A DNA stretch of 64,000 bases from Aplysia californica (lineage: Eukaryota). Made by a program: the position numbers and the translations under genes. This document shows positions 13,149 to 44,666 of this stretch, piece by piece. The notes below the pieces were generated by a model. The model was given only the letters and a program-made list of their open reading frames with translations. It was not told where the DNA came from and searched no databases. The stretch is from positions 423,351 through 487,350 of the forward strand of contig NW_004797845.1 of NCBI RefSeq assembly GCF_000002075.1, in the 5' to 3' direction. The stretch's first letter is position 1, and every line of letters begins with the position of its first letter.

Positions 13149-13199
13149 ATGGACTCTTCAGGAGGTGTACAGGTGTTTGATCAAAAGGCTGTGATACAG
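13149..13199 (+). CDS. UBR2: UBR coding exon 1 ([17 protein letters not shown]); exon starts at 13040 with 5'UTR
   Basis: Strong Kozak context agaATGg; in-frame TAA upstream at 13125; acceptor ctctttcAG at 13039; donor GTTTGT; phase 0 matches exon 2. Confidence 0.75.
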
Positions 13200-19100: not shown

Positions 19101-22100
19101 AGTCAAACGAGTAGTTGCCTGCTCTGATAACTAGTAATTTAAGCCCAGAATGAAGGGAATAGGGTTGTATTATGGATAAGAATAGCAGTGACAATCGTTG
19201 TCATTGCTAAGCATGGTCTGTGCCGTGTTGGGTGCTTTGGTCCAACAAAGCTTATGTTTCTTGTGAGATCAGAAGGTGCCAAGGGACATAGTAAAGTTCT
19301 TTCCTTGCTTATGAGAATTTTCATTGTCCAATAAAATACATTCGTTAGTGTCTACTTTCAGGTATGAACTGTTCTGTTGGTTTGTTTTTACTTTCATTTG
19401 TTGTCTTTGAAGTTACGACCATGACCTAATTGTGTTGAAAGTGCCGTAAAACTTTTACTAAAACAAAAATATCTTCCCCTGCTATAGAACTGCCCCAGTT
19501 CTTTTGACTTTTTTTTTTTTAGAGAGACATGAGGATAGGAAGTCCTTTTGTGTATAAAAAACACCACATCAAGATAATTTGTGCCTACTTCATCATTTTA
19601 GCCATGGCAATCGGGGAAAAAAAGTTATTTAGTTTGAAGATTTTAACAACTGTCACATTTGTGTTTATTTCTATTTTGGTGTTGTTACAAATACAGAACT
19701 GCTTTGTTTCCCCTGTGCTTGTGTAGATGAGCACATCTGGTGGTGGTGGTTACTGCGACTGCGGTGACACTGAGGCATGGAAATCTGATCCCTCCTGCGT
19801 GCTTCACACACCACGTCGGGTAGAGGAGACAGTGAGTGGAGATTGAGTTAACATAAAAAAGAGATAGCTCTGAGTAATTTTTGGGCTAATACTAGGTGAC
19901 GTTGCAACAGAAAGGACCTATTTATATAAAAAAAAGGCAGTATGCTAGTCTCAAAACCCATTTTTAGAAATTTGCATGCCTAAGTTCACTTGAATGTATT
20001 ACAAGGTTGTCCATATTAGGTCTTACAGACAGGCAAGGAGGCTTTCACAGAGGTCTTAAGAAAGATGAATGGGTACACAACTGGTTTAAATTATAAAAGT
20101 AGAGAATGGAAAGGAGAAGTAAAACTTGACATATGTACTGTTTTATACAACAGGAATTAGATGGCAGTTTTGAAAAAAGAAGTGATTCTTTTTTTTTTTT
20201 TTTTGGTCAATTAGTTGTTGTAAGGGTTTTTTTGTAGATAGAGGAAACAAATTTTAGTGAGATGCTCCCTTATAAAAAAGTTTGACTGGTTTTATGCTTT
20301 CCAATGTAGATGAGCTTGCTTCTGAAGTGATTTTACATGTTTGCAGTATTGGACTGTCTTTTTTTATTTTCATCTGCGTACGTGTTGACCTGACTTGGGC
20401 CTGTTGTCAAGAATATATCCAGTTATTTTTAGTTTTAGACTGTCGAAAGTGGTTATAAATTCACTGAAAGTGGTTTTCATGTTTACATATGAGAGGTCAC
20501 TGTTATTTTGGTTTGAACTGAGCTTTCCTGTATGCTTTGTATTATGTGTCATTGTTTACAAAACTTGAAGATGTATAGAAGTAAGAATTTTTTGGAAAAT
20601 ATTCAAACTTCTGTAGACTCTTGTACTGAAGGAGAGCACTTTTATGAATAATGAAGAAGAGTTTAGGTCTTCAATTTTTACCCTTTATCTTCATTTTTCA
20701 CAAAAGGGTTAGGTAAAATTAGAAAAGCTTAAAAATGGATATTGAATGCTTTGCTTTCACCTTCTGGTATCTGCACAAGGAACAACTGAAGGAGTAGTTT
20801 TCAGGCTAGTTGAACAGCAGTGAGGAGAGAGCTCAGTGTGTAACAATAAAAAAGGTAAAGGCCATGTTATGTCCATATTTGAAAAAATAATTCTTGTAAG
20901 CCCACTTCAAGGTATTGAAAAAACCCCAAACTTTTTTTACCCATCCGTTCTTTCAGGGAAATGAGGTGAACCTTCCAGGAGACATGCAGCAGTTTGTCAT
21001 TGGCATGTTTCGCTGTGTGCTCAAGTTTACTGCTGCTGTGCTGACGTGGGACGAGAATGTCACTCTGCCGCTGGGTTTGCAGCGAACAGACGCAGCTCTG
21101 GCCAACATGCCTTACTTGTGTATGCTGTACAATGATGAAGTGCATACTTATGATCAGGTGTCTTTTCTTTCTACCTCAACATTTTTCTTCTTTTAAGAAT
21201 GGTTTTTATACGTTTCCATGGTTTGAAGAGAACAGGGAGCAGATCCTTCTTTACTATAGAATTGTTTGAATACATTTTTGTTGGATTTGTTACCATGAAA
21301 AGATGTTTTGTTTTAAGACAGTTTGATAATGGAAGTGAGTTGGGAGAAATGTTTTTTGTTTTTTTTAGTGTACTTGAACTGTTTTGATTCAGGAGGATAA
21401 GATCTGGGAACCAGGTTCTAAGATTAGAGTGCTGTGCACCTCTGTTGGATGCCTCGTATGTAGGCTGTTACGTCATTGTAGCTTGTCACTGTATGAAATC
21501 ATTGGTGATTAAAATTGTTTCAATGATTTTGCTTTTTTTTCCAAAATCAATACTTTGACCATGATGAGGTGATTGCAAGATTTTCAGAGTTGCTTCTTCC
21601 TATGCTCTCTTAGTCCTTTCAACTCTGGCTCTCAGTACTTGCTGCTTACCACTTTGACTTTTTGCTTGTTTGGAAACCTTTCTATAAAGGTTTTGCTTCA
21701 ATGAGTATGCGCAATATAAATTTAAAAAATAATAATATAATTGCTTGATCAAGTGACTGAATGGTAGTTCCCTATTTAGGTAACTACTTGTACCTGGTCA
21801 ATGTTTGTCTTTACACTCCCTGAGTTTCAGCCAAACTACCTAAAATTGATTCTTAATCAATCTGAAATAGGAAATTTTAGGTTAACAGCCCTGTGAACAA
21901 GTTCATGCATATTTTTTTTCCCTTCCCAGTCTGGTCTTTAGCTACTTTATAATTCCAAACAGCTTCTCTTCTTCCTCCACTGGACTTTGTGATGATTGTT
22001 ATTGTGTGGTTAGATGACAGGTGCTCTGGTGTAGTTTGATCAATGCTTTTCTATCTGACATCTATCATCCTTATCTCTCCTCCTTTTTTTTTTGTGTTTG

Positions 22101-25100
22101 TTACTCTCTTGTAACACCCCTAATCTTCAGTACCTATAAGACCCTATTGTATTACCAGTGCCATAAAACTCTTACTTATACTAAACGATTTTTCCTTCCC
22201 TCTGTTGGCTGTGTTTCCTTTCAGGTGATCAACACCCTCCAGAGAGCAGTCACCTGCACACCACGCCAGGCTCTTGATTATGCCACCATTGTCGATAGAG
22301 AGGTTAGTTCAGCTTATGAACTGAAAACAATTGTAAAAGTAATTTTCTTTTTCTGCCTGCTTCTCACGATTTTGTGCTGTAAATAAATATATTATTTTCA
22401 GGGTGAAAAAATCCAGCTTTATTCTTCTTTTTGAAGATTGCATTTAGTATTTATAGCGTAGTCTTCCTCTTTTTTTCTATTGGCTTTCAATGATGTTTGA
22501 AACGGTTGAAGCTGATTAAAGCTTATTCTAGATATACTTGATTTATCAAGTCTTTCTATGCAGTCGAAGAAGAATCCTTGTGCAGAAAGTACCATGAGGC
22601 CTGTGACCATGCGTGTACACTTTACTTAATGTCCGTAATAATAATAATAGACAGCATTTGTATAGCGCGAATTCCCACCCGACAGCATGCTCTAAGTCGG
22701 CTTTTCAACAGCTCTGTAATGGCCCTTGTATTTGCAATGAATTCAATTTTTTTCCATACTGACCTTTTTTGTTTTGTCTTGTCAGGGCCGCAGTTGTGTG
22801 AAATCTGGAACAGAAGATGAATGTAACACTGTGAGACAGACCATTGAGGTGAGATTCCATTGTGACTTTCGTCTGTTGTAAAAGATTTTGTAATTTCTGA
22901 ATTGTACTATAGTATTATTTAGACCTGTCGCTTGATTAAAGCACTGTGTTATCCACTTAAACCAAACATGGTTGAATTGAAAATGGCAAACCTCCCAGTA
23001 AAGTAAAATTCCTGATTTTGTCCTCTATTTGAGAAATCTCTCAAAGCAGAAAATCTGGATGAAATGAAGAAAATCCAGTGGTCCCACAGATTTTGGATGA
23101 AGTAGACTATTGACTTCTCATAATGAATGTTTTTTGAAGAATAATGCCCAAGCTGCCCTTGACTTCTTATTAACTGAAACATCAGTTTAAGAATTGTCTC
23201 AGATTTGTCTCTTTTTGTATTTCAAGTAGATCTGAGTTTGATGTTCTGCTGCCAATGTTATCATGCTTCTTTATAGTCACTCTGTCCTGCCCATGTGACA
23301 GTCTTGCCTTTCCCCTTGCAGCAAGTTTTAATGGTTTCTTGGGGCTGGCCCTGTTATGTTTTGAAAATAAATGTCCAGAAATTCAGATGAAATGCTATTC
23401 TAACGGGTATAGAAATCTTAAACAGTTTAAAAATTCCATTCTTCATATGCGCTCTTCTGCATTTTCTTTTGAAATGATATGCAAAACATTTTTTGACAGC
23501 AGAGATGAAATTCCCAGGTCATATCTGTGTAATGTGGGATGTGTCAAACTGAAGATATATTTTGGATAGTATGGATTCTAATGAGCTTAGGTTTTAGTTT
23601 TAGGCCGAGTTCTTGGGCAGTTTGCGGTAGATACCGATTTTGGGCCTGTTCAACCGCCATACCGATAAGGTGTCAAAACTGCCGGATTTTCGATGGGTGC
23701 CAAAAGAAGGAAAAAACCCCCATTCTGCAGTGCTCCCATTCTTCTTTGATTTTGCGGAAATCCGTACCTTCCAAAAGTTCCGTACTTGCCGCATCATCAT
23801 ATCACCTCCATGCGTATAAAGAGAGAGAGAGAGAGATCAGCCCTTGCTTCCGTAACTTGTCAGATATTTACGGCAACTCCCGGCAATAAGTTGTATTAGA
23901 AACCGCCAGATTGCGCATTTTGTACACTCGACCATTGTCTATCTGTGCCGTTAGGTCAGCTATATTTTTTCACGTGCATATCGGCTGAAATCTGTCTACT
24001 CATGATAGATAATCTTTCTCCTTCCTTTCATTCTTTCTTTCTTTCTGTCTGTCTTCGGGTTTTTGCTGCGGCTGGAAAATCTGTGCATTTAATTCATTTA
24101 CCAAGGAAACAAAATTGTGAATGTAGAAAAAAAATCGATATCGAAGTAAAACATTCTAAAATAGATCTTAGTCTAGAGAATTGATCAGTACCAAATGAGG
24201 ATTCTACGCAGGGGGACTGCGGGAATCTGAAAAAAACCCCGCTGCGACCCTAGAAAATGCTCAAAGTCCTTGAAACCAAATCTGAGTTCATATTTTACCG
24301 GTCGCCTTTGTGATATTACGTTCGGCTTTCCCCAGACCAGGAGTACGTTTCACGCGAATTAGCGGCTATGGCGGCAGGCAGAAATGTAGCTGTAATACAG
24401 AGACTCCATCGGGAAAATCTAAATCTACTTTCGCTTTCGTTACCGCTCAGAATTGTCCGATGATAGTTTAACGTTAGATTTACAGTTAATAAAAATTTGT
24501 AATATACAGTTTGTGCATAAAAAAACCACAGTGTTGCCATACAAATTAAATCGATATTCTCACTTATGTCACTATAATGACAAAAAAGGAAGAAAAAAAA
24601 AAGCGTCCTTCGATTTCTAGATTGTCGGGCCTGTATCGTGACCGGTCAGTGAACCTGTGCGAGTTCGCATAGGGACTGGCCGACGGTTGCCGGGGTAATC
24701 AAAGTTCATTCAAAGTAGGAGCGTTGCAGGGCTTTGGAATTGAGGGGAGGTGTTTGACGCTATACAGTCTACGGCGGCAGGATAAGGCCACGGTGCAAGA
24801 AACTGATGCTAAAATAAAAACGATAAGTTGAAGTGGTTTTGACATTCGACAATCGAGTGTGTAAATGAGGGAACATTAGAGCAGAGGCTTGATGATTGTA
24901 TCTTCAAGGTTGGTGTTGTCGGATTTGTCAGTGATGACAAATTGAATAGTGGCAATGAGGAAATGCCATTTTCAACCCTCGGAAAGCTCTATGTTGGATG
25001 CCTATGCATCATGATGGCTTACTGCTGATTAAAAACTGGTACTGTGATTTAGCATTTTGAAAAAAAATGAATACTTAGTCCATGATGCAGGGATTCATGA

Positions 25101-25684
25101 TTGACTGATTGGCAGGTTTACACCATCACTACATCCCACGCTCTCACCGTCCATCCAGCTCCGGCCCTCATTACACACTCTCTTTTATTTTCACTTTTTG
25201 CTCTACCGTAAGCCTAACTATAAAGGTTTTATAAATAAGTTTTGTCTTGCATGCTTTTTAAAATCCTTGATCGCTGAAACCAAACACGGTTTTGGCAGTT
25301 GATGTTCTTCTTGCCTCTCCTCAGGCCCAGATCAGGATTCATTTTGTATTTAGATGGTAAAACTAGTTGAAATTAATCGTCTGTCATACCTAAGTCGCAA
25401 AAGACTTTTCAGTGTCCTATGCTAGTGTCGGGAAATATGTTTTAATATAGTTTATATTTGTATGGGCTAGCGGTTTTGAAGTCAGTTTGGCAATCACCCT
25501 GCACTCAATTCCAGATTCAATACTGAATGATAGGTGCCTTGAACGTTAGTCCATAAATGCTTTAAAAAAAAAAAACCTCGCCTCATTACATACACACTGT
25601 TCATCGTAACTTGTACACGCCCAAACACTCCCTTCCCCTCCCCACAAATAGAAACAGTGAACACACACTAGAGCATGCGCTCAT

Positions 25685-25754
<70 letters not shown>

Positions 25755-28700
25755 GCATGCAAAAACAAATTTTCAAAATATAGTTACCCAATCTCGTGGA
25801 GAGCAAGCGCGTTCGATGGGGCAACGATCTTCTTTTTTTTTTTCCTTTGTCTTTGTACTACCTGATTTTGGGCCAAAATACCTGAAACTGACCCAGAATC
25901 TACCTGAAATGGGAACTTTGAGGTAGGCAGCCCTGATATCTTTTTGGCAGGAGGAATCAAGCTCTTAACTTACTAATACGTTTTTCTTTACGTGCAACAG
26001 GTTGTGTAAGTCTCACAAGCTTGCTTTTGCTTTTTCCAGCGCAGCACATCTCGTCATGGAAGCAAGCCCTTGAAGGTGGAGGTTATGCTGAAAGATGTGG
26101 TGGCCCTTCAGCAGTTTGCTCTCAAGGTACTTGGCTGGCTACAGACTGTCAGCGACAAAGCAAGTAAGTTGTCAAGGGAAATTATACTCGTACCTCAAGT
26201 TTTTTTTTTTTATGAACTTGTAGTTACTTGCTTGTAACTTTAAAAAAATTCTACCCAGAATCCTACTGTTTCCATTTTACTTTATGTTTGCTATCAAACT
26301 TCAGAGAATATTTGAAATCTTTTTTTTCTGCTTAAATCTTGGAAAAACTGTGTTACACCACTTTTTGAAAGTAACAGTAAAGCTTGCTGTGTCCTGTCAG
26401 AAATTTTTGGCTCATGATTTTCTTATATGGCAGAAATGTCAAAGTGTTTTACATGTCAGGTCTCGATTGCTTTAATGTTTTTGTGACTCCACAGGTTCTA
26501 TACGAAAGCTTATGTGTCAGACCCTGATGGAACCCAGCACCGAAGGCGGCGTTACTACCTTGTCAGTGCTGGAGAAATTTATACAGGCTGACACACGTCT
26601 CTGGAAAGGTCACTGTTTTGTATTTCTTGTCCTCTAAAGACAGCAAAAAAGTTTATTTTAGCTTGTGCTCTTTGCGTATATTGTGAGGATGCACTGGATA
26701 CTAGAAATTTTATTCACTTTTGTATTTATTGGCGTGATTGATGATGGAGAATCATGCATGTCGTGGACACAGTGGAATCCAGCGCTCATCAATTTTTGGG
26801 CGTATAGAGTTATTGGTATAATCTTAAAACTTGTATATTTGTCTTTCTTTTGTTTAAAAAAAAGTACCCATTTATTTTAAAAATGAAGGCAGTGGGGTTT
26901 CCTCGTGTCAGCAGTAAAATTAATTAGAAAATGGCTGAAAGTTTGGTGACTTTCGAAGCTTGAGTGTCCTGGGAAACTACAATTTTACATTTTTCTGTGT
27001 CTTTTATCAACTTTTCCCCCCCTAAAATCCACACAGAAATGTGTATTTAAATGGACTGAGTGGTGTTGAGCAAAAAAAAAAAAAAGCTAAAAATTGTCCA
27101 ATGGGCAGAGAAATCCTGATTTCCTCAACTTCATTATTTAGATGAGTGCCTGATTTCATCATAGTGATACATTTATGAACTCTTTGTCAGTCACTAGTCA
27201 TTGTTGTCCTATTGCAATTTGAAGAAAATAATGGAGGAAAGTTAAAAATTTGTATTTTCATCCCTTATGGTCATTTTTCATTCATAGTTGGAGGAAAACA
27301 CATACTCCAACCGTTGTGGTTTTTATTTATAGTGTAGGTTCTTTTGAAACTAGAAAGAGTTATTCCTGTGACCACAGCTGTTATAAGCGAGATATGTAAA
27401 AAGTGCTTATTCCGATTTTGGCTGAATATTCTGATAGCTTTATTTCCTAACTACTTTCTTGTCTGTCTACAGTTGCAAGAGTACAAAGCCATCAGCTGCT
27501 CATGTCTTGGTAGGTGATAAGCTTGTCTTGTTACAGATAAAGAGCTGTTAAGTCGTAAAAAAATTATTTATTAAATTATTTATTTACACAATGGGTTTAC
27601 TGTTCTGTAACTCACTGGAAAATGCTTTTGATATTCTAATTTTGTTTTCCAGTGTCGTATACCAGTTTCTGTATATCTGAAAAACTTTTATTTATGAGCC
27701 AAGAAATTCTTCTGTAAATTGTAATGTCATGCTTGTTGACATCTTTCATGGATGGCCTGAGGGTGTGTGTCACCAGCAGCTTCCCTGTGGGTTAGACATT
27801 GATAGACACTTTCTTTGGGTTCTGTTTGTTCTGTACTTCTGCTGTCACTGTTTTTCTTCCTCCCTTGTCTCTTTTCCACCCAATAGCCTCACCTTTACCA
27901 TCATTGTGTTAGTATTTGTAATGATTAATACGTTTAAAAAAAAAATTGATCTCAATCATGTATAAATAAAAGCCTCTTGTGGGTAGCATGGACTTACTAT
28001 TTTTGCTCATTCTCTCACACCTTTTTGAATTTTGCACTTAATAAAAGTATTTTTTAAATTGATTTTTTACAGTGTATTGAAAGATCCTCCTTCTAAAAAG
28101 CAATTTTCTGTGATATTCACTAAGGTAAGAGGATGCTCTTTGTTTGATTTTTGTTGTGTTTCCAAACTCAGTTCTGCAATCAATAAGTTGATATCTGTTC
28201 TTTTTTTTAATGACTGAATCAAGGCTCAATATTTGATGATGAAAGCTTTATATAAATATGAGAAAAAGTACTCGCCAATATGTGTAGTTTCAGGTGACTG
28301 GGGCAAATGATTGTCTTCCTGTTGAATATATGAGCAGTTATGTATTGGTTAAATTACATAAATACCACTGATGTTACTGCATGTAATTTCTTTCTATGTG
28401 TCTGTGCTTGTTTGTCCTTATGTAATGCATATCTGAGCTACTTTTGTCTTGCAGCAGAGAAGGTGTCTGAAACTGGCCTGTGAAAGCGAGAGCTTCACCA
28501 TCACATCAACTTTGTTTGGACCGAACGTAAAGTAGGAAAATGTTAAAGACACATAGCAAATGTCCTCATTTGGATTTCTCACAAAGATTCAATTGATGAT
28601 TAGCAAAGAATGAATCTTTTTCTTCTTTGTGTTCCCCTGCTAGATCTCAGGGATAGTCGACTACTGGTTCTTCAAACTGCAGTGCAACTGCTTTTTACGT

Positions 28701-31700
28701 ATGTGACCGTTTTTCCTGCTTCAGGCAGCCTCATTCTGATTTCGAAGGTACTCTTTATGTTTTTACTCTGACAAGAGTATTTTCAGTTTTTGGTAGGAAT
28801 TAATGTTGAATTTTGCCCAGGTGGTTGCTGAAGCCAACTCTTATCGAGTTTTGGGACCACCAAGGGATCTTGCACATGAGACCTCCCGAGATTTTTCTCT
28901 TTTATCCGAGAAGGTTTGCTGTTTGATCTTACCTGTCCAAAGATAAGGGGTGTGGCTGAAAGACAGCAATAAGATGGAGCTGGGAGTAGCAGTGGAAAGA
29001 GTCAGGAGTAGGGGGCAGAGGAGCTCAGAGAAAAAAGGGCTGGGGGGGAGATATAAAGTGGAAATGAAAGCAGATGACTAAACAGGATTAGACAACAGGA
29101 AAGGACGTGGAAGGAGATAATTATAAAGAAGAAACTTTTTTCTTCCCTGTCAGGTTTTGATCCTGTGACCTTTTGAATGAGAGGTGAACATCACAAGAGC
29201 CTCCAACTAAGAATGGATGAATTGTGGTTCTGAAAACATTATGCTGGGTAGACTTTTTTTCAAAAGTCGGGGCAATATGATTACTTCCAAGTTTTTCAAT
29301 GTGTTTTTTTTATGGGTGGGGATTTGAGAAATGTTTTATTTTCTTAAAGTTTGTTAAGTAGTTTGTTAAGTTGAGTGGATGGGGGATACTGTTCACATCG
29401 TGATTGGTAACTGTATGAGTAAGGCTGCAACACAATGCACTATTTTGGCTCTCTGAGATACAAATAGAATGTGCATAGAAATACCTCTGAAAAGCAATCT
29501 TTTATTTCACCATTTAGGTGATCAATGAGAGATGGAGGGCATGATGGAAATTTGTCTGATATTATGGCTTCATGTTCTGTTCACCATACAACTTATTAAT
29601 GGTGGTAGCTCCTAATACTGTTCCCTTGGGCATTAAAAGCCCATGAAGATCTATAGTCTTGAGTCTCCATGGTGTTAAGCTGGCCTTAAGAAACGAGCCC
29701 ATAAGAAAGTTAATGTTCTTTCGTCACCCTGCAATGTTTGCATCTGTCAACTTTCGTGTCAAGACCGAGGAGGATTGCTGACCATTGTAGTTTGTGTGTG
29801 GTACATTTTTATGTAACCTGAAACATTATGATACTTTCCAGTGGTTCCAGTACATGGTGCGCCAGTTTAGCCAGGACGATCATGATCATGACGTCTCCAT
29901 GCCCAGCCTCTCAGTCCAGATTTTCACTGTGCCCAGTTTGGTAGGTTGCCAGTGAAGCCTGGCACCTTTGGCTTCTGCTTGCTCCCAATGCCCAACTGCA
30001 CGATGTGGTGTCGGGGACCTGCCCTGGCATTTAACAGCACAGTTCTGAATTCTTTCCTCCAAATTGTGCTGTTCTTTGAAGTCATTGATGCCTTAGAAAT
30101 CTGGGCGGATGTTGAAGCTGATTTGGTACCTCATCTCTCGTTCCTATTTTTAAGAAATTTAACATGACCTTAAAGTAAGAAGTAGGTCCTGAAACAGCTG
30201 AAATTGATGTTTTAAATGAAAATCAAACCAGAAATTGTTTTCGGTCTATCCTTTTTAGGATGTGCTTTGAGAAAAAGAATTCAAAATTTTCTCTTTTCCT
30301 GAGAGTTTCCCAATTCAATGTTATCCCCTCAGATTTCTAGTTGTCCTTTTTCTGTCTCATCAGTTTGACTCCAACAGGTTTGTGGTTTGTGAATGGTTGT
30401 TCGCATGAACCATTTATGGTTGTGTTCACTTCACATTTGTCATCACTTTAAAATATGATTACACACACACACAAAAAACTCCTGAGTTGTTAAGAACAAG
30501 TTGAAAACTTTCTTTCAAGGAAATGAGTATTTCAGTTACACATTTAAAAGAATTGCCTACACCGTTGTGTGCTATGAACTTTGAAGTTCTTGTGCTCTTT
30601 TGGATTGAATTGGTTAATTCTTACTTTTTCAAGTGTTCAGGAAATGACTGAAGTGAAACCTAATGTGAAGATGAACATGACTTTTGTCTTTCTTGTAAAC
30701 ATTTTCTTCCCAACAAATTTGCTGTGTTTTTTTCCCCTTTAATTTCTGTTTCTCTTTCTTTGCTTTTCTTTTCTTTTTTCTTTAATCCCTGTAGTGCTAT
30801 TCCAAGCTGTACGAAGCCTTTTTGCAGGACGACCACTCTCGCTCCGTATCCATTACCCGCCTCTCCCTGCAGTTGTTCGGGACTCCCTCGTTGGTAGGTG
30901 TCACTGTTGACATTACTGCTCACCTCCAGATGTGTGTTTCTACAGGCCTTTATAGTCCTTTATTTCGTATGCCGCCAAACTGTGCTGCGTTTTCTACCGA
31001 AATCAAGTGCCTGCTTGTGTATCTTCGCTCCTAGTGTTAATTTTTGGCCCAGAACTCGGTCTCTTCCTGTTATGCTTGAACTTTTAATTTGTGTGACATA
31101 AATTATACATTTTGTTTGATCCGTTAAAAATTAGTCCCTGTAATGTACCGAGGTGGTCATGCGAAAAGTCCTTGTGCTCATTTCATGCTTCTGCACAGTT
31201 TGTCTCCAAGTGCTTGAATTGTTTGTTATTGCACCATTTCCTACAGCTCTTTTTGCAGTAGTGTTGGCTTAGAGTGCTTGCTCATCGGCAGCGTCTCGTA
31301 CTTTTCTTGATTATTTAATGGCTGTGGTTGGAACTTCTCTCTCTTTGCTGCTTGCTTTGCTTGCAATGATTTTTCTCTAATACCCTTTTGAGAACATCAA
31401 GGTTTTGAGATTGCTGCCTATGTTCCACATTGTTCGTGTTTACCATATAACAAGTTCAGCAGGTTCAGTGCTTTGTAATACTGCATGTGTAGCTGAAGTT
31501 TTTCTTGCTCTTTATGGGTCTGTGACTTATCCTCGGAAAAGTCAAGGCTGTCATTTTTCACTTTCTCAATAAGTGATGAGAAACTTTGTCCGCCTGCTTT
31601 CTTTTATTGAAGAAGAATATAATTTTTTTGGTTTTTTTACGACTGTTAAGCCTGATACTTGATGCACCAAATCAATTGATAAACACTGTTCATAGTGGAT

Positions 31701-34700
31701 CCTTATGGTTACAGTTTTTTGTGCTTGTTCACCTACATAGTGGAGAGCTCGGACGACTTTACAATATCCATCAGTCTGCACTATTTGATAATACTGTTAT
31801 GTTGCTCGTGCAATTTTGTTGACCGCCATCTATCTGCTAGTCAGACTGTCCCAGTTGTTCAGAAGGATGGTGGGGCACTCATTCGATTAGGGGGGAGGGG
31901 GGGGGGGCTACACCTGAAGGCTATCTCGCTTATTACTGGACCGAATTTTACCAAATTTTACGCATATAACAAGCATACTAAGGAGTCTTTAAATCCGCAA
32001 TCAAATTTGAGAAAAAGTTTCGTTTCCATGGATATGGCGGCCATATTGGATTTTGTTGACATGTCATACGTAATGAATACCGCACTTATCGCTCATGGAA
32101 ATTGAATGTTTTTTTGCATGCGTGTTCACAAACATTAGATCTAAAAATTGGTTTGTTGTTTTTTTCCTAAACGAATTAGAAAATTTTTTCTGAATTTTTT
32201 TCTGAGGTAGCATTCAAGTTTTAAAAAAATCCTTAAAAACCCACACTCCAGACACCACCAAAAAAAATCTATTCCATATATCAAAAATTCAACAGACAAA
32301 CTTATAGTATTACATTTTTTCTTCATTCTGTGAAAATGTCAAGAAGATTGGATGAAAAATGGTGGAGTTATTCAAAAAAGTATAGAGAAAAGTCGCGTTT
32401 TGAGAAAACGGCCGATAAAGAAAAATAAAATACTGACTTTATGAGGAAATGGCGGTGACAAACATGTCCGGTATGGGAAAAAATACAGTTTTTGGGGGTT
32501 CTTATATGATGAAATAGTTATAGGAGAGGCTGAGGAAGCTAAAAATGCCTACAACTCAAATTCCATAATTTTTAGCCGAATTTTGACTTTGGGGGTGTAG
32601 CTCCCCCCCTTAAGTTCAATATTTTCCTTTCTTGTTGGTTTGTAACGTACACCAGTATTCAATTTGTTAAGTTTGGTTCCATTCAAGGCTAGTAAAAGAA
32701 AAATGATTTGGTTATTTATTTGTTCAGTTCTCTTTATGTTTTCATTTCTCCTTTGACTGTTTTTAGTTGCATTTTTCTGAACTGAAAATATTGTAAGTAT
32801 TGTGCCCCTCGTATTGTTTTTTTTTTTTTTTGTGAAGCACATATCCCTGTTTCCCCTTCTTGTTTCTCGATGTATTAAGAATATTATGCTAAATCAAAAT
32901 GAAAACTGCTCTTAGAAAATTTAGGATATTTACAAAGCTAGAGAAACATAGTTTTTATTAATCAAAATCCAGTTGTACTATGTGTTTTGTTTCATTTTTC
33001 TAGAGATTTTTTGCTAGATGCCTATAAGGGATAATTGTTTTTACTTATTTTTGTCACTTGCTAGTGTTATACCCCATACTGCTGCTATTAGATACAGCTT
33101 ATATTTTAATTTTTCAGCACATTGTGATATCTGTTATGGACTTTGCTGAACTCGGGGTAGAGATGAAGGGAGTGGGGGGGGGGAGCTTCTTTCTCTATTG
33201 GGGATGTTGCTAAACATTAAAGAAAGGAAAAAGTGTCTTTGAATTGTGAGTTTTTTGGGTTGTTTTTTTCCTTTTTACCATGAACATCTTCTTTTCCACA
33301 GGCTAGGATGTTGATCGCTGAACATGATCTGCTTTCTGTGATAGTCAAGGCATTTCTCTCAGCTTGTGATCACAAGAAAAATCGTAAGGGACTTAGTCTT
33401 CATTAATTCTTCTTTTTTCACTGTAATGAGATGCCCCTTTTCATTTTCAGCTTTCCTGGTCAGTGTTACTGTTTCTTGACATGAAAGTGGTATACGATAT
33501 TTTTCAGACTACAGCCTTGCGTACTACTGTGATAAATTGGATTCCTGCTTCTCCCCCCCCCCCCAGCAATTCCCAGATCAAATTAACGCAATAATTTGCC
33601 TTTTGCCTCTTTTCATTCTTTTTTTTGAGTTTAGCCTTCCTCATGTCCCATTTGAAACTGGTTGGTGCTTTCTTTTTATGTTACCTAAATGAGTAAAGGG
33701 TTACCTCAGTTGTTTAAAAGCAGTCTTTTTTTTGTGAAATCTAAGTCCAACAGTATTTCAAATGCAAACAAAGACTTGTCCTTTCATCAGAATAGGTCAC
33801 TCGTATTTTTCTTCTTTAAAAATTTAAAAAAATTAAGACTCATTTTCATTGTGGGGTTGTCCTTTTTTTATAAGGGGGGAAAGGTCGGCAGAACTGGAAA
33901 TACAAAGGACTCTAAGGTTCACTCCATTTCGTTGACAGTCAGTTGCTCTTTTGTGCTTTTGCAGGGATTTTATTAACTGGATGTAGTGCTTTTTGTCTTA
34001 TCATAGCCCTCCCAAGGGTTCGATCATTGTGGTCCTTCAGTCGAGAAGTAAGAACTATCGACAACAAAATTTAATGAAGATGATAGTACTCTTTAAAACG
34101 GCATAGGCCATGTTTGCAAAAGAATAGTTTGTATGACATGTTGAAGAACCCACCTTTGACTCTCTCACAATCAAATATGAGGCGTGCTGAATAAAATGAG
34201 TTACTTGTCAGATTTTAGCCCCATGGACAAAGATATGTCAAATTTATAGTTTGAGTTTTTACAATTTATTTGCCTTTCGGGTGGTAAACACAGCATATAC
34301 CGTGCTTATGCAACTGGTCCCTGAGATGCAAACACAGCATATTCTGTGCTCGCTCCTAACATGGGTAGTCTAATTTTAAACTACACCAATGCAGTTAAAG
34401 AAAGAGTATGACATCATGTGTTGTTCCTAGAGATTTTTGGCCCATACCTCCATTTTGGATTGTAAGAAGAGCTACTCATTTTGTCAGCACGTCTCACAAA
34501 TATAAATTCTTGCGTTATGAGTGCTACATGTCCACACACAGACTCAAACTGCTATCAACAACATCACTCAGCACCAAGCGAAAAGCCATTCACTTTCCTT
34601 TGACACTCGCTCACAATAAAAGAGCAGATTTTGTAAAGGTATTCGATGTCTCCCTCCAAATGATATTTGCACTGTTCTCACAGGAAAGGTGAAAGGAAAG

Positions 34701-37700
34701 TTAATAGTTTTTCATGTGGTGCTGGATATTGCTGTTAATAGAGGTTTGGGTCTGTGTGCGGACTTGTTGCACTCATTATCGCAAGGGTTTACATTTGACT
34801 ATTTCTCCCAGGACTAGGTAAACTGAGTTTTGACCGAGCAGAGAGAAGTTCTGTCTTCAAGAGGTCAATGTATGTTCTTCACGATCTCAAGTAAGTGGAA
34901 CTTTAAAAAGCTGTTTTGCTAAAAAAAAAAATGGATTCTGTTCAAATTTTTGCTACAGTTTGCCTTGGCTCATACCTTGAAGGTGTTTTCACTTGGGAAT
35001 GATGACTTAAATTAGTTGATTGAGAGTGGAGCCTAGTTTAAACAAAAATGCTACATTGGGCACAGCGTAGAAAAGCAAGCCATTTGAAGTTAACCAGTAT
35101 CAAGATTTCTGTATACAGATGCCTCCAGCAAGGTAGATGCCCCTGCAACAAAGTGCTGATAGTCAACAGTTTCATCTCGTTGGCTACAATTTTTTAAAAC
35201 CCCAAAGTTCTTAAATAGTATGTAGAGAAGTTTTGCTTAGTTAATGAAAAAGATCAGTTCAGTATTCGCGTGGCCATTTTTTAAATTTTCATTCCTCTAT
35301 CTCTTTAGTTATGTTTTTGAGTATATAACTGCCATCAAGTACAAGGGGTATGGTCCGCCTCCTTTGACAATATTTCTCCTAGCTCATTGTGTCATAAATC
35401 CATGTCCTGAATGTTTGATATGTAGAACTCAATTATCTGCCTGGTTTTTGTGAAATGTACTTTTTTTAAATTAAGGAGGAACAGACTAAATCATTTTGCA
35501 TTCATTAATTAATGTACATATTTCCGGTTTTGTTTATTAATATGTAAGTTTGTCTGTAGAATCATGCTTACAAAATCTTTTTAGGTATGCCCTGGTGTGC
35601 AAGCCTACAAGTCCAGAGGACTGGTCTGAAGCCTTGAGGAACAACTTCCTCCGCGGCCTGACATCATTTTTGTCTCTGCTCACAATGATTCAGGTAAATC
35701 CCCACTTTATATGGTAAAGGAAGGGAGTGTTGGAAGACGACTGTGCTTTTTGTATCAAAATCAACCTTTCTTATATGTGTCGTTGTTCACTAAATACTTT
35801 CGGTATACGTAGACAGAGATGGTACTGTCTTTTGTTATTTCCAGACTGACAATATATTATACTCTTTAGTTCCTGTCTTGTGCGACCGACATCTATTGTG
35901 ATGTAATGGTAAAGTACTTTTTCCTTGCACACAGAACACTTGAATTTAATTCCTGCTTGGAGAATAGTATTTATCAAATATCTTTTATCTCTGTGAATAT
36001 TTCATGCATTGTATCAATGGTTGTCGCCCGTGTGGTTCTCGGTGCCCTGTCCAAGAGACAGGGGAGCAAAGAATAGGACCACTGTATCCGTACCGCGCAT
36101 GTCGTAGAAGGTGACTAAGGTCAGTTGGGCAAAGGGTTAGCAGCCCTTTCTCGTAAAACAAAAAGCAGCTACAAAAACATCAGCTGCAAAAACAACACGA
36201 CTGCCAGTTCTGGAAGATATAGGACCTTCATCACCGAGGAGAGGAGAGAATATGGAGTGTAGAATGACGCAGGATGGTGAAAGCCGAAAGGAAGCCACCA
36301 AGCCGAGAAACCTCCTGTCGACCGAAAGGAATCCACCAAGCCGAGAAACCTCCTGTCGACCAGAAGAACCACCAGGCTTGGCACCTGGAATGTTCGTAGA
36401 ATGTACGAGGCAGGGAAGGCACTGCAGGTTGCAAGAGAGACGGAGGGCTACCAACTGGACATATTGGGTCTCTGTGAGACGAGATGGACGAATGCAGGGG
36501 AGTGCCAACTTGCTTCAGGGGAAACAGTTCTCTACTCTGGACATCTGGAGGAAAACTCGCCGCATGCAGAAGGAGTAGGTATTAAAAAGCGGGGACATCA
36601 TGGAAACGGATAGAAAAGGATGCTCTGGACAGGCTTCGCTGGAGTAAGGCTGTTGATGGCCTGTGCTCCACTGGGAGTTAAAAAGGGCAAGATAGAGAGA
36701 GAGATCAATGGTTGTGAACTTCGTTGCCACTGTGACTCTACAACAACTGCATTCTGACAAAACTTTTGTGTCGTATCAATGATCAGGACAATTATCTTGT
36801 GTTTTTGCTGTTGTGTCTAATGCTAAGGGCATAGGCTTATTGGCTGTAGGATGACAATTGTACTGTGTTGTACTTTATTAGGGCATAGATTGTTGACTGT
36901 TCTCTGACAATTGTCTTGTGTTCTTGTACCTCATTAGGGCATAGTTTTTTTTACTGTGTTCTGACATTGTCCATGGGTGGTTGGCGGGTGCTCTGGTGTG
37001 GTTTGCTCCTTCTTTCCTATCCACGACGTCACTTTTCGCCCGATTCTGTTACTTTTAGTTAGTGTGACTCAGCAGCTCGCCGGAGCTCCCTGGCTTGGGG
37101 TCACGGGCTTAATGAGCCCTGAAGCGACTTTGCCGGTGTTGGTTAAGGAGTTCCCATTTTTGTCCATGTTTGAAACGATATGACTTCTAAACCATTACAC
37201 TGATGGACTAAAAGCTCAATTTTTAAAGATTTATTCTGTGTTAGAACAGTTAATTTCTGTGCCTTAGTTTTTGTTCTAGACAAGTGTTTTTAGAGTACCC
37301 AATTTGTCCTATTTTAGTTACAAACTTATGAATAAATGATAGTTTATTTAAAAACGGCACGACAGATCTCTCCAAAATCTGTGTTAAACTGACTATGAAT
37401 ATCATGTCTTTTACTATGAGAAATCTGAAATCTGTGCAAGTAGTTTTGTGAAGTTATTAGAGAAGAAAGATTCACGTCTGCCTTCTTTAACTAAAGGCAC
37501 TCAACGTTAGCTCTTTATTTTACCATTAAACAAGAGAAAGTTACTCTGCGTTTGTTCATGAATCGTGCTGTGTCTGTGGTAGCCTGCACACAACTAAGAA
37601 AGATATATTATGCAACTTAAAAAAAAGAAAACTGTGTAAATACATGGGTAGGGATAAACTTGTATGGAATAAAAATAATGACAGCTAACACATTCATTTT

Positions 37701-40700
37701 TAGTTTTTATGTCGGAAATATGCCCGCACACTTATGAATGTAAAGAAATCAGAGAGGGCTCTCGTGGCCTAGAGGTTAAGGTGTTGGCCTCTAATTCAAA
37801 GGTCCTGGGTTCGATTCCGGGTAGCGACCAAAAAATTTTCTTCTCTAAAATTGTCTCCTTTCACCTCCTTTCCTGCTCTCTAACAATGTTCTGTTGTCTG
37901 CTTTCATTTCCACTTTCTGCCCCCACCCCCTCACCTCCTTTGCCCCTCCTCTGGGCTCCTGACTCTTTCTGCAGCCTTTCTACTGCTAATCCTTGGCTCC
38001 TCCTTACTGCTGTCTTTCTGCCACACCCCTGATCTTCTGGTAGGAAAGATCTACATTTAGCCTTCTCGGACAAGGGCGAAAAATCTCGGAGGGCCCGCGT
38101 GCAAGTTGCGCAGGTTAAAGATCCCTTGGTGGTCTAAAATCAATAAGAGTAGGCTTCGGCCGCCACCCGGGCAAAATTCAAAATTTCCTACCAACTGAAA
38201 ATATTAGGTGTGTCCCGCGCGCTCATATGACCTTATGCAGTTGCGAGCGCCGTAAAACACTTTACAAAAACAAAAAAACAAAAGAAATCAGAACATTGTC
38301 AGTTATTGCAAATGGTCATAGAAACGAAAATATAAGCTGGAAAAGTCAGGTGCTGATTCAGTGTCACCAGAAAGCTTGATATTATTCTTATAACCCAATT
38401 ACAAGAGGTCATCCCTGTTATTCAGTCAACTTACAAAACCTAGACTTAGTGCTTTAAGAAAAGTACGGAATTTCAGGAGTGTAACAGATACTGTTTGTGT
38501 ATTGCATTGTAGAAGTTTTCTTGCACTAAAATCGATTTGTACTTTTTCATAGAGAGACTACAGGGTAATTTTTTCAAACGTTTGAGAAAATATGCGAATA
38601 TTCACGATTATATTAGACACATAAAGTTGTATTTGGAGGAATTACTTTATAGCGAATTGTGTGCCAGATGGATAAAGTTTCACAATTACTGCTTTCTATT
38701 ATATATGCGCAGATACCATCTTTTCTGAGTAACTGCTCCAATGTTATGTCATTCATGTTCCAAAAGCTCGACAGTTTTTGTTGTGTCGTTTATTTTTTAT
38801 AAATATTTTTTCATTCACACTTGTCAAAAAAATGTTACAATTTAGCGTTGCCGACTACAGCGCGTCTAATGAAATAACCAGACAGATTACAATGTCCGTT
38901 CTTTTTTTAGTCTCAAGTGCTGAACTGCTTGCTTTGTGTGCATTAAATGATCATTATCATAAATACAAGGATACACCTAAAAGTACCAAAAATCAAGTCA
39001 GCCCAGACAGAGCGGTGACAGGGAGTTGACCCCCGTGACCCCGACGTGATAAGGCACTTGGCCGGGAACCCCCCGCTGCAACTAAAATTCCACTGCCAGT
39101 GTGCCGTGTATCAAACATCTGTCGTCCTTATTTCCCGTCCTTATCTCCCGTCCTTTCATTTTGTGTTTGTTACTCTCTAGGAACTTATATGACGATATTG
39201 TATTGCAAGTGCCGTAAAACACTTACTAAAACTAACTGACATTGTCCTGTGTTGTCGTACTTTATTAGGGCATAGATTGATGACCGCTCTGACAATTGTC
39301 CTGAGTGCTTAACGGGTGCTCTAGTGTGGTTTGCTCCTTCTTTTCTATTAAATATCTGTCATCATTGATCCTCCTCCTTTTATGTGTTTGTTACTCTCTT
39401 GTAACACCTCTAATCTTCGTACCCCGCGGGGCAGTGCCACTGACTGAAGTGTCTTTAGGCCATTCCCAAAGGGGGGACATTTCTCATTCAAGCATAGTAG
39501 AATTGTAAATGGACTGACTCATGTCACGCTCATAACTGTGCCTGATCTACAACAGGGAACTGCTGCTTTTTCTTTCCTGATCCTTACTATTGTCATTATC
39601 CTCTACTTCTTTTGTATGTTTGTCACTCTCTTGTGACCTGCTATTTTGGGGTGCCTTGATAGTCGAAGCAGACCTTGTGCTGTTGAAGCTAGAGAGGTGA
39701 GCAGTCTTAGTCTGATTCCCTGAAAAGACTTCTCTGTTGACACCCACCCCTTGGCACTCATATGACCATATGCAGTTTCGAGCGCCGTAAAACCCTCTAC
39801 TATAATTTTTTTTAAACTAATCTTCGGCACTTATATGACCTAATTGCACAGCATGTACCTTAAAATGCTTACTGAAACTAAACTGACAATTGTCTCGTGA
39901 TGCTGTACCTTAGGGCATGGATGCGGTTAAGCGGCAGACTGGCCAGCACTTGGAGTTTGACCCTGAGTGGGAGGGCGCCTTCACCATACAGATCAAACTG
40001 GAGGACTTGCTGGTGCTGTTTTGCGAATGGTGTGCAGCTGATGTGAGTACAAGTCATACAGTGTAGAGTTTTAGTTGTATAATACGGAAAGAAAAAGAAA
40101 AAGTAAACGGAGGCATGGGTATTTTGGAAATTTTATGGTAATATTAGAAGAATGTTTTGACATTTTGCCCCATTTGGGCTTAAGAATAAAAAAACCCAAA
40201 ACATCAGCAACACTAAGTGTAGAGTTATTGATGTTTGGGTTTGTAGTATGTGTTCGATCTGATGTGGTTTACTTTTCCTGCCTCTTTTATCTGCTACCAT
40301 TGCTTAACCTGTAAATTACAACAAAACTTTACTAAGGTATGTCAGAACTGTTTGACTTAGTAGTGACAATGGTACAAATGTTCCGTTGCTATATTGAATG
40401 GGCATATAATTTTTTAAGCCAATCTGAGGTCGGTGGGTAGTTGGCGGGTGCTCTGGTGTGGTTTGCTCCTTCTTTCCTATCAAACGTCTATCGTATTTAT
40501 CTCCCCTCCTTCTTTTTTGTGTTTGTTACTCTCTTGTATGACCTCTAGTCTTTGGCACTTATATGACCTTATTGTGTTGCAAGTGCCGTAAAACTCTTAC
40601 TAAAACTTTTTAAAAACCCATCTGAGGTAAAGTGGAGATTCCCTGCTTTGTTTAACCTAGTAAAGGGATTTGTGGGACCTGTAGATATAACAAATATTGA

Positions 40701-43700
40701 TAAAACTACCATCATACAAAAACAACGCCATAGTTTTGCGTTATGAAAACATCTTTTGCCTCTTGTTTATGGATTGAACAAAGTAGTGTTCAGTGCGGTC
40801 CCATTTCTCTTTTTCAGCGTTACTTGTTGGTGGAAGGTTACAAGGCCGTGATGGAAGTTTTGGCAGGCTGCAGGGAGACATGCACATATAAAAATGCCAC
40901 AGGTATAAATGTATAATGATGATGATAGCATTTTGTTTTGCCATATGAATCACGACATGATTGAATCAGGCACTTATCACTTTTTTGACATATGGAGTTA
41001 TTGGTATAATCTTAAAGGCTGTTCATTTGTCTTGCTTATAATGAAAAAAATACCCATTTGTCTTGAATAGAAGTTGAGATATTTGCTATTAAAGGAGGTG
41101 GGCGTTACCAGGTGTCAGAGGTAAAATTAGCCAGAAAATAATGCTGTTGTTGTTGAAGAACGTGAGGTTAGATGTGTGTTTGGACCTGTGAATGTGAGAA
41201 AGGCGTGTGGTCCAGACGGTGTGCAACCCAAAATTCTGAAAATGTGTTCAGCACAACTTAGTTTTATTTACACCTATATTATCAACCAGTCGTTGTTGAC
41301 ACATGCTATTCCCACTATTTGGAAATGTTCTGAAATCGTCCCCCTTCCAAAGAAAGAAAAAATTACTGAAATGAATGACCTCAGGCCAATAGCCTTAACA
41401 TCGGTAGTTATAAAATGTCTAGAAAAAAATTGGGCTAAAAAGACTACGAATGTACATAGAACCCATCCAGGATCCTCTACAATTTGCATATCGTCACCGG
41501 AGAAGTGTGGAAGACGCCATTTTACTATTTCATGACAACATATATAGACACTTAGACAAGCCAAAAACATACTGTAGGCTCCTGTTTGTTGATTTTTCGT
41601 CAGCCTTTAATACTTTCCAGCCAGCTATCCTTTTCAAGAAATTAGAAAACATTGGTGTTAACGTCAATTTAATATCATGGATAGGCAATTTTCTTACCAA
41701 CCGAACCCAGTATGTAAAATTAAAACATTCTTCATCGACATACATCACATCAAATACAGGGGCCCCTCAAGGATGTGTTTTGTCACCAGTTTTATTCACA
41801 CTATACACGAATGATTGCCAAATAAACAACAGTAACATCAAGTTCATAAAATTTGCAGATGATTCAACCATAATTGGGCTAATTCAGGCTGACCATAACG
41901 AAAGCGCTTACTGGAATTTTGTACTTAACTTTTTCAAATGGTGGGAAAATCATAAGCTGCTTTTTAATGTGAAAAAAACCAAAAGAACTTGTTGATTTTA
42001 GAATAAAGAAACTGCCCCTGCAGCCACTCGAAATTAAATGTGAAAACATCGAGCAAATGTCAGACTATAAGTATTTGGGTGTTACAATAGACAACAAACT
42101 CAACTGGCATGTCCACACTTCTCTTCTGCATAAAAAAAGTGAACAAGAGACTATTTTTTCTAAGGAAACTAAAGTATTTTAAAGTTGATAAAACATTGAT
42201 GTTCATGTTCTACCATTCAACCATAAAAAGTATGATCAATTTTTGTATAACAGCATGGGCCGGTAACACAAGACAACAAGATAAAGAAAAATTAAATCGA
42301 CTAATACGGAAAGCATGTAAAATTTCAACATCTACATTCCCCTACTTGGATGAATTGTACATAACAGCTTGCACTAAAAAAATTAATTCCATCTTTTTAG
42401 ACAGCAATCATCCCTTGTTCCCTCAAATAAAAACATCAGTCAGAAGTAAAAGACCTAGGCTTCTGATCCGTAACAAAGAAAGATACAGTTATCTATCAAA
42501 ATGCTTCCATCTTAACCATCTTGTATAAGTATACTTACGACCTTAGGGCATTCATCAAAATAACATTGAGTATGTATCTAGCTTACGATTATTATTTTTT
42601 ATATTTCTGCTCATTTATATTATGCATGTGATTGTAAGCCTATGTGTGTGTGCATGTGTGCACGCGCGCGCGCGTGTGTGTGTGTGTGTGTGCACGTGGT
42701 GAAACACCAAACCAATGTGCCAGGATCTGGACCATAAAGATGTATCTTATCTTATCTTATCTTAAAATGGCTGCCAAGGTTTGGTTCATTGCAAAGCTTG
42801 AGTGCCCTTGGAAGCAGCAAATGTACCCTTTTTTTGTGTGCCTTTCATCAATATTTTTGTTCTGCAAAATTCACACAGATGTGCTGAGGCAAAAAATAGA
42901 AAGTTCGATAAAAATTGCTGAGTGAGTGGAGAAAATACCGGTTTCTTTGATTTCATTATTTTAAAGAGTGCCTGATTTCACCATGATGCAACACATATAT
43001 GTGAGTTGTATGTATTTTTAGCCTTGCTGGAGTCGCACCAAATTCTATATTACCTTCTTGTCTATTATTCTTTTCAAAGGATAAAGATAAATTAATGGTA
43101 GAGTTTATTTAATGTAGCTTGTAGGTCTACATGAATGGGATCACTTTGTGAGAAGCACCACACTGTTGGTCCAAGTGAGCCTTTCCTAAAATGGGAGTAT
43201 CACTGATGGTTTAGATCAGTTTTCAAGCTTGGCCCAAGACAGTTGGAAATTTTCCAACTTGTATTTGCAGAAACTTTGCCAAACTTGCAATAGTCCCAAT
43301 TTAACAAGTAACTTCCAATGAAGGTCCCATTCTTTTTTTTTTGCTACGAAAATACTTTGCATCTCTTTTGGTAGACAAAGTTGACCCACTTTGCTCTGTA
43401 TATAAACTTTAGTCAGTATGTTAGTATCATGGTCAGTCTTTGCAATCCGAAAAACACAGCTTATCTTCCAGCTAGGGTTAACACTTTGAACCCATGAGGC
43501 CAGTGATTTTTGCTGTTTTGAGTACCCGTTGAAAAAACTTTGAAAATGTTGAATTGACAATTATGATTTCACTATGTTCTTTTTTTGTTTTCAGTGGGGA
43601 ATCACACTGGGGAGGTGATCGACTTTGATGTGTCCACGGACCCAGTTTCTATACACTACCCTCTGAATAGGTTTCTGGCCGGTGAGGACATAAGACTGAA

Positions 43701-44630
43701 TTGAATTCATTAACTCAAGCATTAACATGACATTTGACTCTGTCTTTTTAAGATTAAAAAAAATTAATTTTTCTGCCTTTTTTTTTTTGGTGCTAATAAT
43801 AAGATTACATTGTTGTTTTGAAATACTTTTTTCCTTCTTCTTTCTTGAAAAACTTACTTGTTGAAAGTATCATCGCTCAGATTTGATTTTCCTCTGTATA
43901 CTGGTTTGATACTGTTAAAGCACTTGATGGGTTCAGACTATATCTAAAGTAAATTGGAACTTGTTCGTCTTTTTCATTTAACTTTTGCAGTATTATTTCC
44001 CCTCCACCTATTAAACATGTATCACACTGAAAAACATTTATGAAACTTTTTTGTTAATTTCATTTACTCAGTCATAGTTGTACCTTTTATAGTGGAATAA
44101 CACACACACAGTTACATGGTTATATCATGTACTTTTTATAGCAATTTATAATTTGATGAATTGTGTATATTATCCTCTTTCTTTTTTTTTCTTTAACCTC
44201 TTGCCTTTGAAATGGTCTAGATGTTTCTAGTAGGGTGTTACAGTGGCACAAATGTAAAATGAAACAGATATTTAACAATATTGTTAAACTACTTTATTGA
44301 CGAAATTTTTATTCCAGCTCTGCATGTTCATTTGGAGACCCATGGACTGACTTTTTCTTCTCCGGAACTGCAAAATCCTGTGAGTTGACATGGAACTTGT
44401 CTTTCTTTCCTGAACTTTTTTTGGATCTGATTGTATGTTCATTTAAAGTACATTTTACCAGGAATTTTTAATTTGTTACCTCTTTCCTCCGGAAAAAATA
44501 GTTTGTTTCAATGGAAAAGACATAGTCAAATTGTGTCTTTATACAGTCATACTTCTTCGAGGAAACCACTTATTGACGAGGAGAAAAGTGGTCTTCTTAG
44601 ACAGGTGGTTCATTGTCCTCTTGGACAGTC

Positions 44631-44666
<36 letters not shown>

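What the first reader, a model, noticed from the sequence alone, without database searches (positions are those of the whole stretch)
29842..30893. Tandem paralogous, probably mutually exclusive, exons (12a/12b) in an invertebrate UBR1/2 N-recognin
Seen: two 99-nt phase-0 exons, both open, both ending TTG|GTAGGT, encode the same family segment: [33 protein letters not shown] versus [33 protein letters not shown] (14/33 identical). Length and motif are conserved despite heavy divergence, which implies both copies are under selection. Recollection to verify: human UBR2 has two alternative versions of this same segment ([22 protein letters not shown] versus DDHERAVSVTALSVQFFTAPTL); 12a resembles the first and 12b loosely the second. 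Inference: either an ancient bilaterian isoform switch or a convergent duplication, swapping a scaffold helix just downstream of the ClpS-like type-2 N-degron site and possibly tuning the ligase by tissue.
Basis: partly seen in the sequence, partly recalled or inferred. Interest (0 to 1): 0.88.

Follow-up and report, generated by a model that had tools for sequence, protein, structure and literature searches.

The report
Twin swap exons in snail UBR1/2
A protein-disposal enzyme gene in this sea-slug-like snail carries two interchangeable versions of one small exon, a pair kept in molluscs, annelids, brachiopods and ribbon worms, and jawed vertebrates most likely duplicated the very same exon independently.

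Summary
Observation confirmed: two intact 99-nt phase-0 paralogous exons (29842-29940, 30795-30893) are exon 12 of the single UBR1/2 gene of a heterobranch gastropod. Public annotation already holds both 1778-aa isoforms, differing only here. Both copies are under purifying selection (dN/dS about 0.05 and 0.16). The pair, always a-then-b, occurs in gastropods, bivalves, chiton, octopus, annelids, a brachiopod and a nemertean, so it dates to early Lophotrochozoa. In many worm loci the separating intron is only 30-61 nt, pointing to steric exclusion; in molluscs it is long, and both-exon models exist, so exclusion may leak. Amphioxus and horseshoe crab loci hold one copy. The gnathostome UBR2 pair is published (dated to Gnathostomata). 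Independent duplication of the same exon is likeliest (~0.68); 33 residues cannot exclude an older origin. This scan noted similar exon pairs in other genes of this genome, not UBR.

The parts
29842..29940 (+). Exon 12a, 99 nt, phase 0-0; ancestral-type copy (loop DDH-D-H); residues 392-424 of isoform P0046
   Evidence: orthologues
30795..30893 (+). Exon 12b, 99 nt, phase 0-0; derived copy (loop DDH-S-R); residues 392-424 of isoform P0056
   Evidence: orthologues
29941..30794 (+). Intron between 12a and 12b, 854 nt; 122-nt AG-free pyrimidine-rich zone before 12b; no conserved element versus two other heterobranch loci
28073..28124 (+). Upstream constitutive exon 11, phase-0 donor
33302..33385 (+). 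Downstream constitutive exon 13, phase-0 acceptor (3' end approximate to a few nt)
13149..64000 (+). Host gene: the UBR1/2 N-recognin E3 ligase (UBR box 93-160, ClpS 220-295, winged helix 782-878, PRT6_C); 39 coding exons inside the window, gene continues beyond it
   Evidence: one further exon tested finds a single locus in the genome

Best explanation
A tandem duplicated exon substitution (mutually exclusive homologous exons). The ancestral bilaterian gene had one symmetric 99-nt phase-0 exon here, encoding a helix-loop-helix unit of the helical scaffold. It duplicated once in an early lophotrochozoan; copy a kept the ancestral loop (DDH-D/E-H), copy b changed it to DDH-(Y/S)-R. Splicing normally picks one copy, giving two equal-length ligases that share both N-degron pockets and differ in one scaffold hairpin; the loop charge swap most likely changes a protein contact or scaffold dynamics rather than degron recognition (inferred). 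Exclusion is probably steric where the a-b intron is 30-61 nt (annelid-like loci, nemertean) and regulated, possibly leaky, splice-site competition in molluscs with long introns (inferred). Gnathostome UBR2 duplicated the same exon independently. Shown: anatomy, selection, distribution, order, annotated substitution isoforms, secondary structure. Inferred: exclusion mechanism, convergence, function.
For: Two 1778-aa annotated isoforms of this gene differ only at 392-421. Equal-length a/b isoform pairs in three Haliotis, Liolophura, Ostrea, Octopus, Lingula, Owenia. Genomic a-then-b pairs, both intact: Elysia-like L004, Bulinus L071, Owenia L005, Tubulanus L006 and 29 metagenome loci. dN/dS versus L004: a 0.09/1.98, b 0.22/1.38. 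Column 16: H in 25/26 a, R in 22/22 b, H in 13/14 single-copy taxa. Amphioxus locus (no gaps) has one exon with the same borders and no second copy; all its annotated isoforms carry one version; Limulus has the segment inside one large exon; nematode Soboliphyme has one exon with the same borders, none downstream. Human event dated to Gnathostomata, UBR1 not listed (PMC9741552 supplement). Vertebrate exons closer to each other than to a or b. a-b intron 30-61 nt in 18 loci; in Tubulanus 53 nt against a minimum of about 73 for its other 40 introns; under 50 nt donor-to-branch-point is the published steric criterion (PMC5740500). Model pLDDT 89, matches yeast Ubr1.
Against: Both-exon models exist for Ostrea, Physella, Mercenaria, Xiphophorus, Lepisosteus and a neither-exon model for Tachysurus. 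On 33 columns no history is rejected: independent duplication p-AU 0.58, b-plus-vertebrate 0.66, one-to-one orthologies 0.08-0.12. All vertebrate copies share the R of copy b. Echinoderms, hemichordates, named tunicates, cyclostomes, flatworms and cnidarians were not sampled. No conserved branch point or RNA structure explains exclusion in gastropods.
Confidence: 0.68

Rival explanations
1. One bilaterian duplication into an H-type and an R-type exon; lophotrochozoans kept both, amphioxus and ecdysozoans kept a, vertebrates kept only b, and gnathostome UBR2 duplicated b again.
For: All 22 vertebrate rows and all 22 b rows have R at column 16; best likelihood among five constrained trees, by 1 log unit; also the best constrained tree.
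Against: Rests essentially on one column (His to Arg is a single-base change); vertebrates keep the acidic residue at column 15 that b lost; needs two gains and at least three independent losses against two gains and none.
Confidence: 0.17
2. One ancient bilaterian switch with one-to-one orthology between 12a/12b and the two vertebrate UBR2 exons (either mapping).
For: Same exon, same borders and phase; mollusc a shares an acidic column 17 and a PSL end with the second vertebrate exon; not rejected at 0.05.
Against: Those shared residues are absent from annelid, brachiopod and nemertean a copies; the mapping needs reversed exon order; the other mapping scores no better; needs losses in ecdysozoans, amphioxus, UBR1 and, by the published dating, lamprey; fails the between-species-greater-than-within criterion of PMC8373072.
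Confidence: 0.08
3. The two exons are independent cassettes or are often used together, not mutually exclusive, in long-intron molluscs.
For: Both-in predicted isoforms in Ostrea, Physella, Mercenaria; 99 nt keeps the frame, so decay cannot enforce exclusion; no steric block in an 854-nt intron.
Against: Only single-exon isoforms are on record for this genome; the exon ends inside a helix of a packed scaffold; introns of 30-46 nt in relatives make joint inclusion implausible; de novo gene predictors readily join such exons.
Confidence: 0.07

Closest known systems
Gnathostome UBR2 mutually exclusive exon pair (human ENST00000372901 vs ENST00000372899; PMC9741552 supplement; hamster Ubr2, bioRxiv 10.1101/863175)
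   Same: Same gene family, same 33-residue segment and borders, two tandem versions used as substitutes; a fish contig (P0001) shows a short 63-nt spacer like the worm loci.
   Different: Published age is Gnathostomata; both vertebrate copies are R-type and resemble each other; the lophotrochozoan pair is H versus R, more diverged (mean 16.4/33), in a pre-2R single UBR1/2 gene, and not in matching order.
[quoted passage not shown]
   Same: Equal-length homologous exons replacing one structural element while keeping core residues. ACOX1 is a precedent for repeated duplication of one exon.
   Different: UBR2 is not among the events that paper traced to invertebrates; its method looked for bilaterian orthologues only if tunicates or lancelets had the event, so this pair would not have been sought.
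Yeast Ubr1 helical scaffold (PDB 7MEX/7MEY; bioRxiv 10.1101/2021.04.12.439291)
   Same: The model of residues 90-880 superposes on it (TM 0.75; Z 29.2, rmsd 4.0 over 733 residues); the exon lies in the scaffold between Ubr-Box2 (ClpS-like) and the winged helix.
   Different: No role for this hairpin was found in the passages read; contacts of the loop could not be measured.

Membership tests
UBR1/UBR2 N-recognin E3 ligases | UBR box, ClpS-like domain, winged helix and PRT6_C domain in order | tested here: met
   Pfam hits above cut-off in both isoforms
UBR1/UBR2 N-recognin E3 ligases | Fold like yeast Ubr1; segment homologous to UBR1/UBR2 396-427 | tested here: met
Mutually exclusive homologous exons | Adjacent, homologous, same length and phase, both open with GT-AG sites | tested here: met
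Mutually exclusive homologous exons | Each copy occurs alone between the flanking exons in transcripts | tested here: inconclusive
   Annotated isoforms P0046 and P0056 and equal-length pairs in relatives; these are predicted models, reads not seen
Mutually exclusive homologous exons | No exon-joining (12a-12b) reads | not testable with these tools
Mutually exclusive homologous exons | Both copies under purifying selection and conserved in relatives | tested here: met
Steric-interference MXE | Donor-to-branch-point distance under about 50 nt | tested here: not met
   854-nt intron with many AGs in this genome; plausible in 18 worm-like loci and Tubulanus (30-61 nt)
Orthologue of the gnathostome UBR2 exon pair | Each copy closer to one vertebrate copy than the vertebrate copies are to each other, in the same order | tested here: not met
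   a-V1 17.5, a-V2 17.3, b-V1 17.7, b-V2 16.6, V1-V2 20.3 of 33; order
Orthologue of the gnathostome UBR2 exon pair | Pair present in intermediate lineages | tested here: not met
   Single copy in amphioxus and Limulus; echinoderms, hemichordates and cyclostomes not sampled
Orthologue of the gnathostome UBR2 exon pair | Exon tree groups copies across phyla | tested here: inconclusive
   AU test rejects none of five histories

The most novel reading that the evidence does not exclude
The H/R exon pair is a bilaterian-age isoform switch of the N-recognin scaffold: vertebrates descend from the R copy alone and rebuilt a two-state switch at the same exon in UBR2, and the loop charge swap controls a partner or allosteric site of Arg/N-degron ligases that has not been described.
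Probability: 0.15. Interest if true: 0.72.

Novelty: new member of a known kind. Interest (0 to 1): 0.52.

Why it matters
Repeated duplication of exactly the same exon in two distant lineages, each kept for hundreds of millions of years, is rare and marks this scaffold hairpin of UBR1/2 as a tunable site. The vertebrate UBR2 isoform pair has no assigned function in the papers found; the lophotrochozoan pair offers an independent natural experiment with a clean two-residue signature to test. It also gives a series in which the same exon pair has a 30-60 nt intron in some phyla and a 0.3-1.1 kb intron in others, useful for studying how exclusion mechanisms turn over. The kind of event itself is well known and the isoforms are already in automatic annotation, which caps the interest.

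Tried and rejected
In one local tree locus pieces were joined with X. Three metagenome loci (L040, L043, L064) were flagged vertebrate-like by translation, may be human, and were dropped without printing or further comparison; four unnamed Logan vertebrate-like proteins (P0096, P0124, P0139, P0149) were left out; human sequence was seen only in the PDB alignment. The N run at 53885-54042 was left alone. Dead ends: first own-genome search was off-frame; single-sequence fold failed; one cluster look-up timed out (30); three contig look-ups found nothing and two gave no DNA; free exon tree did not converge (63, 64, 68). Rejected: a third copy at 28455-28531 (no profile hit, 77 nt); docking-site/selector pairing or a distal branch point (nothing conserved); donor hairpins at 12a and 12b (present here, weak in Bulinus, not shuffle-tested); pseudo-exon status of 12b (intact and selected in all relatives).

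Full report
Observation. The window holds a UBR1/2 gene on the plus strand: a bivalve UBR2-like protein maps exon by exon across it, and the annotated protein of this genome maps to 39 coding exons from 13149 to 63998. Between exon 11 (ends 28124) and exon 13 (starts 33302) lie two 99-nt open phase-0 exons, 29842-29940 and 30795-30893, each after AG and each ending TTG|GTAGGT. They share 14 of 33 residues, against at most 10 in shuffles and 7 elsewhere in the introns. No third copy is found.

Already annotated. The protein collection holds two 1778-residue proteins from this locus, P0046 with 12a and P0056 with 12b, differing only at 392-421. So automatic annotation already treats the exons as substitutes.

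Distribution. Equal-length isoform pairs differing only in this segment occur in three abalones, a chiton, an oyster, octopuses, the brachiopod Lingula and the annelid Owenia. Genomic loci show both exons intact and in the order a then b in an Elysia-like contig, Bulinus, Owenia, the nemertean Tubulanus, where the protein on record carries only a, and 29 partly redundant metagenome loci that look bivalve or annelid (their identity is inferred from sequence). Both copies are under purifying selection: dN/dS 0.09/1.98 for a and 0.22/1.38 for b against the Elysia-like locus, and mean pN 0.08 and 0.05 against pS 0.38 and 0.27 among 15 annelid-like loci. The pair therefore goes back at least to the common ancestor of molluscs, annelids, brachiopods and nemerteans. 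Outside, an amphioxus locus without gaps has one exon with identical borders and all listed amphioxus isoforms carry one version; Limulus has the segment inside one long exon; the nematode Soboliphyme has one exon with the same borders and none before the next exon, with only 2 kb upstream available; crustacean-like loci are single and mostly lack these introns. Two long-branch unnamed sequences, possibly tunicate but unplaced, show one H- or Y-type version.

Vertebrates. Non-human vertebrate proteins show both versions from sharks to mammals; models and a contig that hold both give the order DDHER first, DDHDR second.

History. Column 16 separates the copies: H in 25 of 26 a, R in 22 of 22 b, H in 13 of 14 single-copy taxa, R in all 22 vertebrate rows including fish UBR1; b also loses the acidic residue at column 15, which vertebrates keep. 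Mean identities are a-V1 17.5, a-V2 17.3, b-V1 17.7, b-V2 16.6, V1-V2 20.3, a-b 16.4. None is rejected, and searches were short. Parsimony decides my ranking: convergence needs two gains, no loss and one repeated His-to-Arg change; the others need three or more losses. PMC8373072 reports a precedent in ACOX1 and shows why this case would be missed: invertebrates were searched only if lancelets or tunicates had the event. My literature searches found no description of the lophotrochozoan pair; the library lacks most subscription papers.

Splicing mechanism. The exon is symmetric and frame-neutral, so decay cannot enforce exclusion. In 18 metagenome loci the a-b intron is 30-61 nt, while neighbouring introns mostly run to hundreds of bases; in Tubulanus it is 53 nt, below all 40 other introns (minimum about 73); a fish contig shows 63 nt. 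This fits the published steric criterion, by inference. In Owenia (280 nt), bivalve-like loci (459, 554) and gastropods (854-1110) it is long. Here the two donors are identical and weak, the 12b acceptor is stronger than 12a's, and no conserved intronic element, distal branch point or pairing was found. Predicted isoforms with both exons exist in Ostrea, Physella and Mercenaria, so exclusion in molluscs may be regulated and leaky.

Protein. A confident model (pLDDT 89) matches yeast Ubr1. The exon gives a helix (393-402), the DDH loop (403-410), a helix (411-419) and the start of the next helix, in the scaffold about 100 residues after the ClpS-like domain and well before the winged helix. Core positions are kept in both copies; the consistent difference is the loop, acidic D-H in a and x-R in b.

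Verdict. Real, selected, ancient within Lophotrochozoa, a new member of a known kind, and most likely convergent with the published gnathostome UBR2 pair. Interest 0.52.

Noticed in passing
L005:8143-8980 (Owenia UBR2 locus): The 3' end of one coding exon and its donor are repeated in tandem about twenty times (unit about 37 nt) at the start of the following intron.
   Followed up: no
L005:28403-32283 and 37543-43411: Two collagen genes are nested on the opposite strand inside the Owenia UBR2 gene.
   Followed up: no
L038:1235-1336 (also L041, L042): In these worm-like loci exon b is 102 nt, with one extra Arg codon before the DDH motif, and the a-b intron is only 30 nt.
   Followed up: partly
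window 28455-28531: Open 77-nt AG..GT stretch with a strong acceptor in intron 11; would shift the frame if included; no homology to exon 12, probably chance.
   Followed up: partly
window 31899-32609: 16-nt inverted repeats (94%) about 680 nt apart in the 12b-13 intron, resembling the ends of a small DNA transposon.
   Followed up: no
window 41131-42525: Reverse-transcriptase-like open stretches of a broken LINE in an intron, read from the translation.
   Followed up: no
window about 17880, 36900, 54800, 62200: Several copies of one short interspersed repeat in introns of the gene, seen as recurring translated text.
   Followed up: no
annelid-like loci L024-L066: Exon b shows lower synonymous divergence than exon a (mean pS 0.27 vs 0.38), hinting at splicing signals inside b.
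   Followed up: partly
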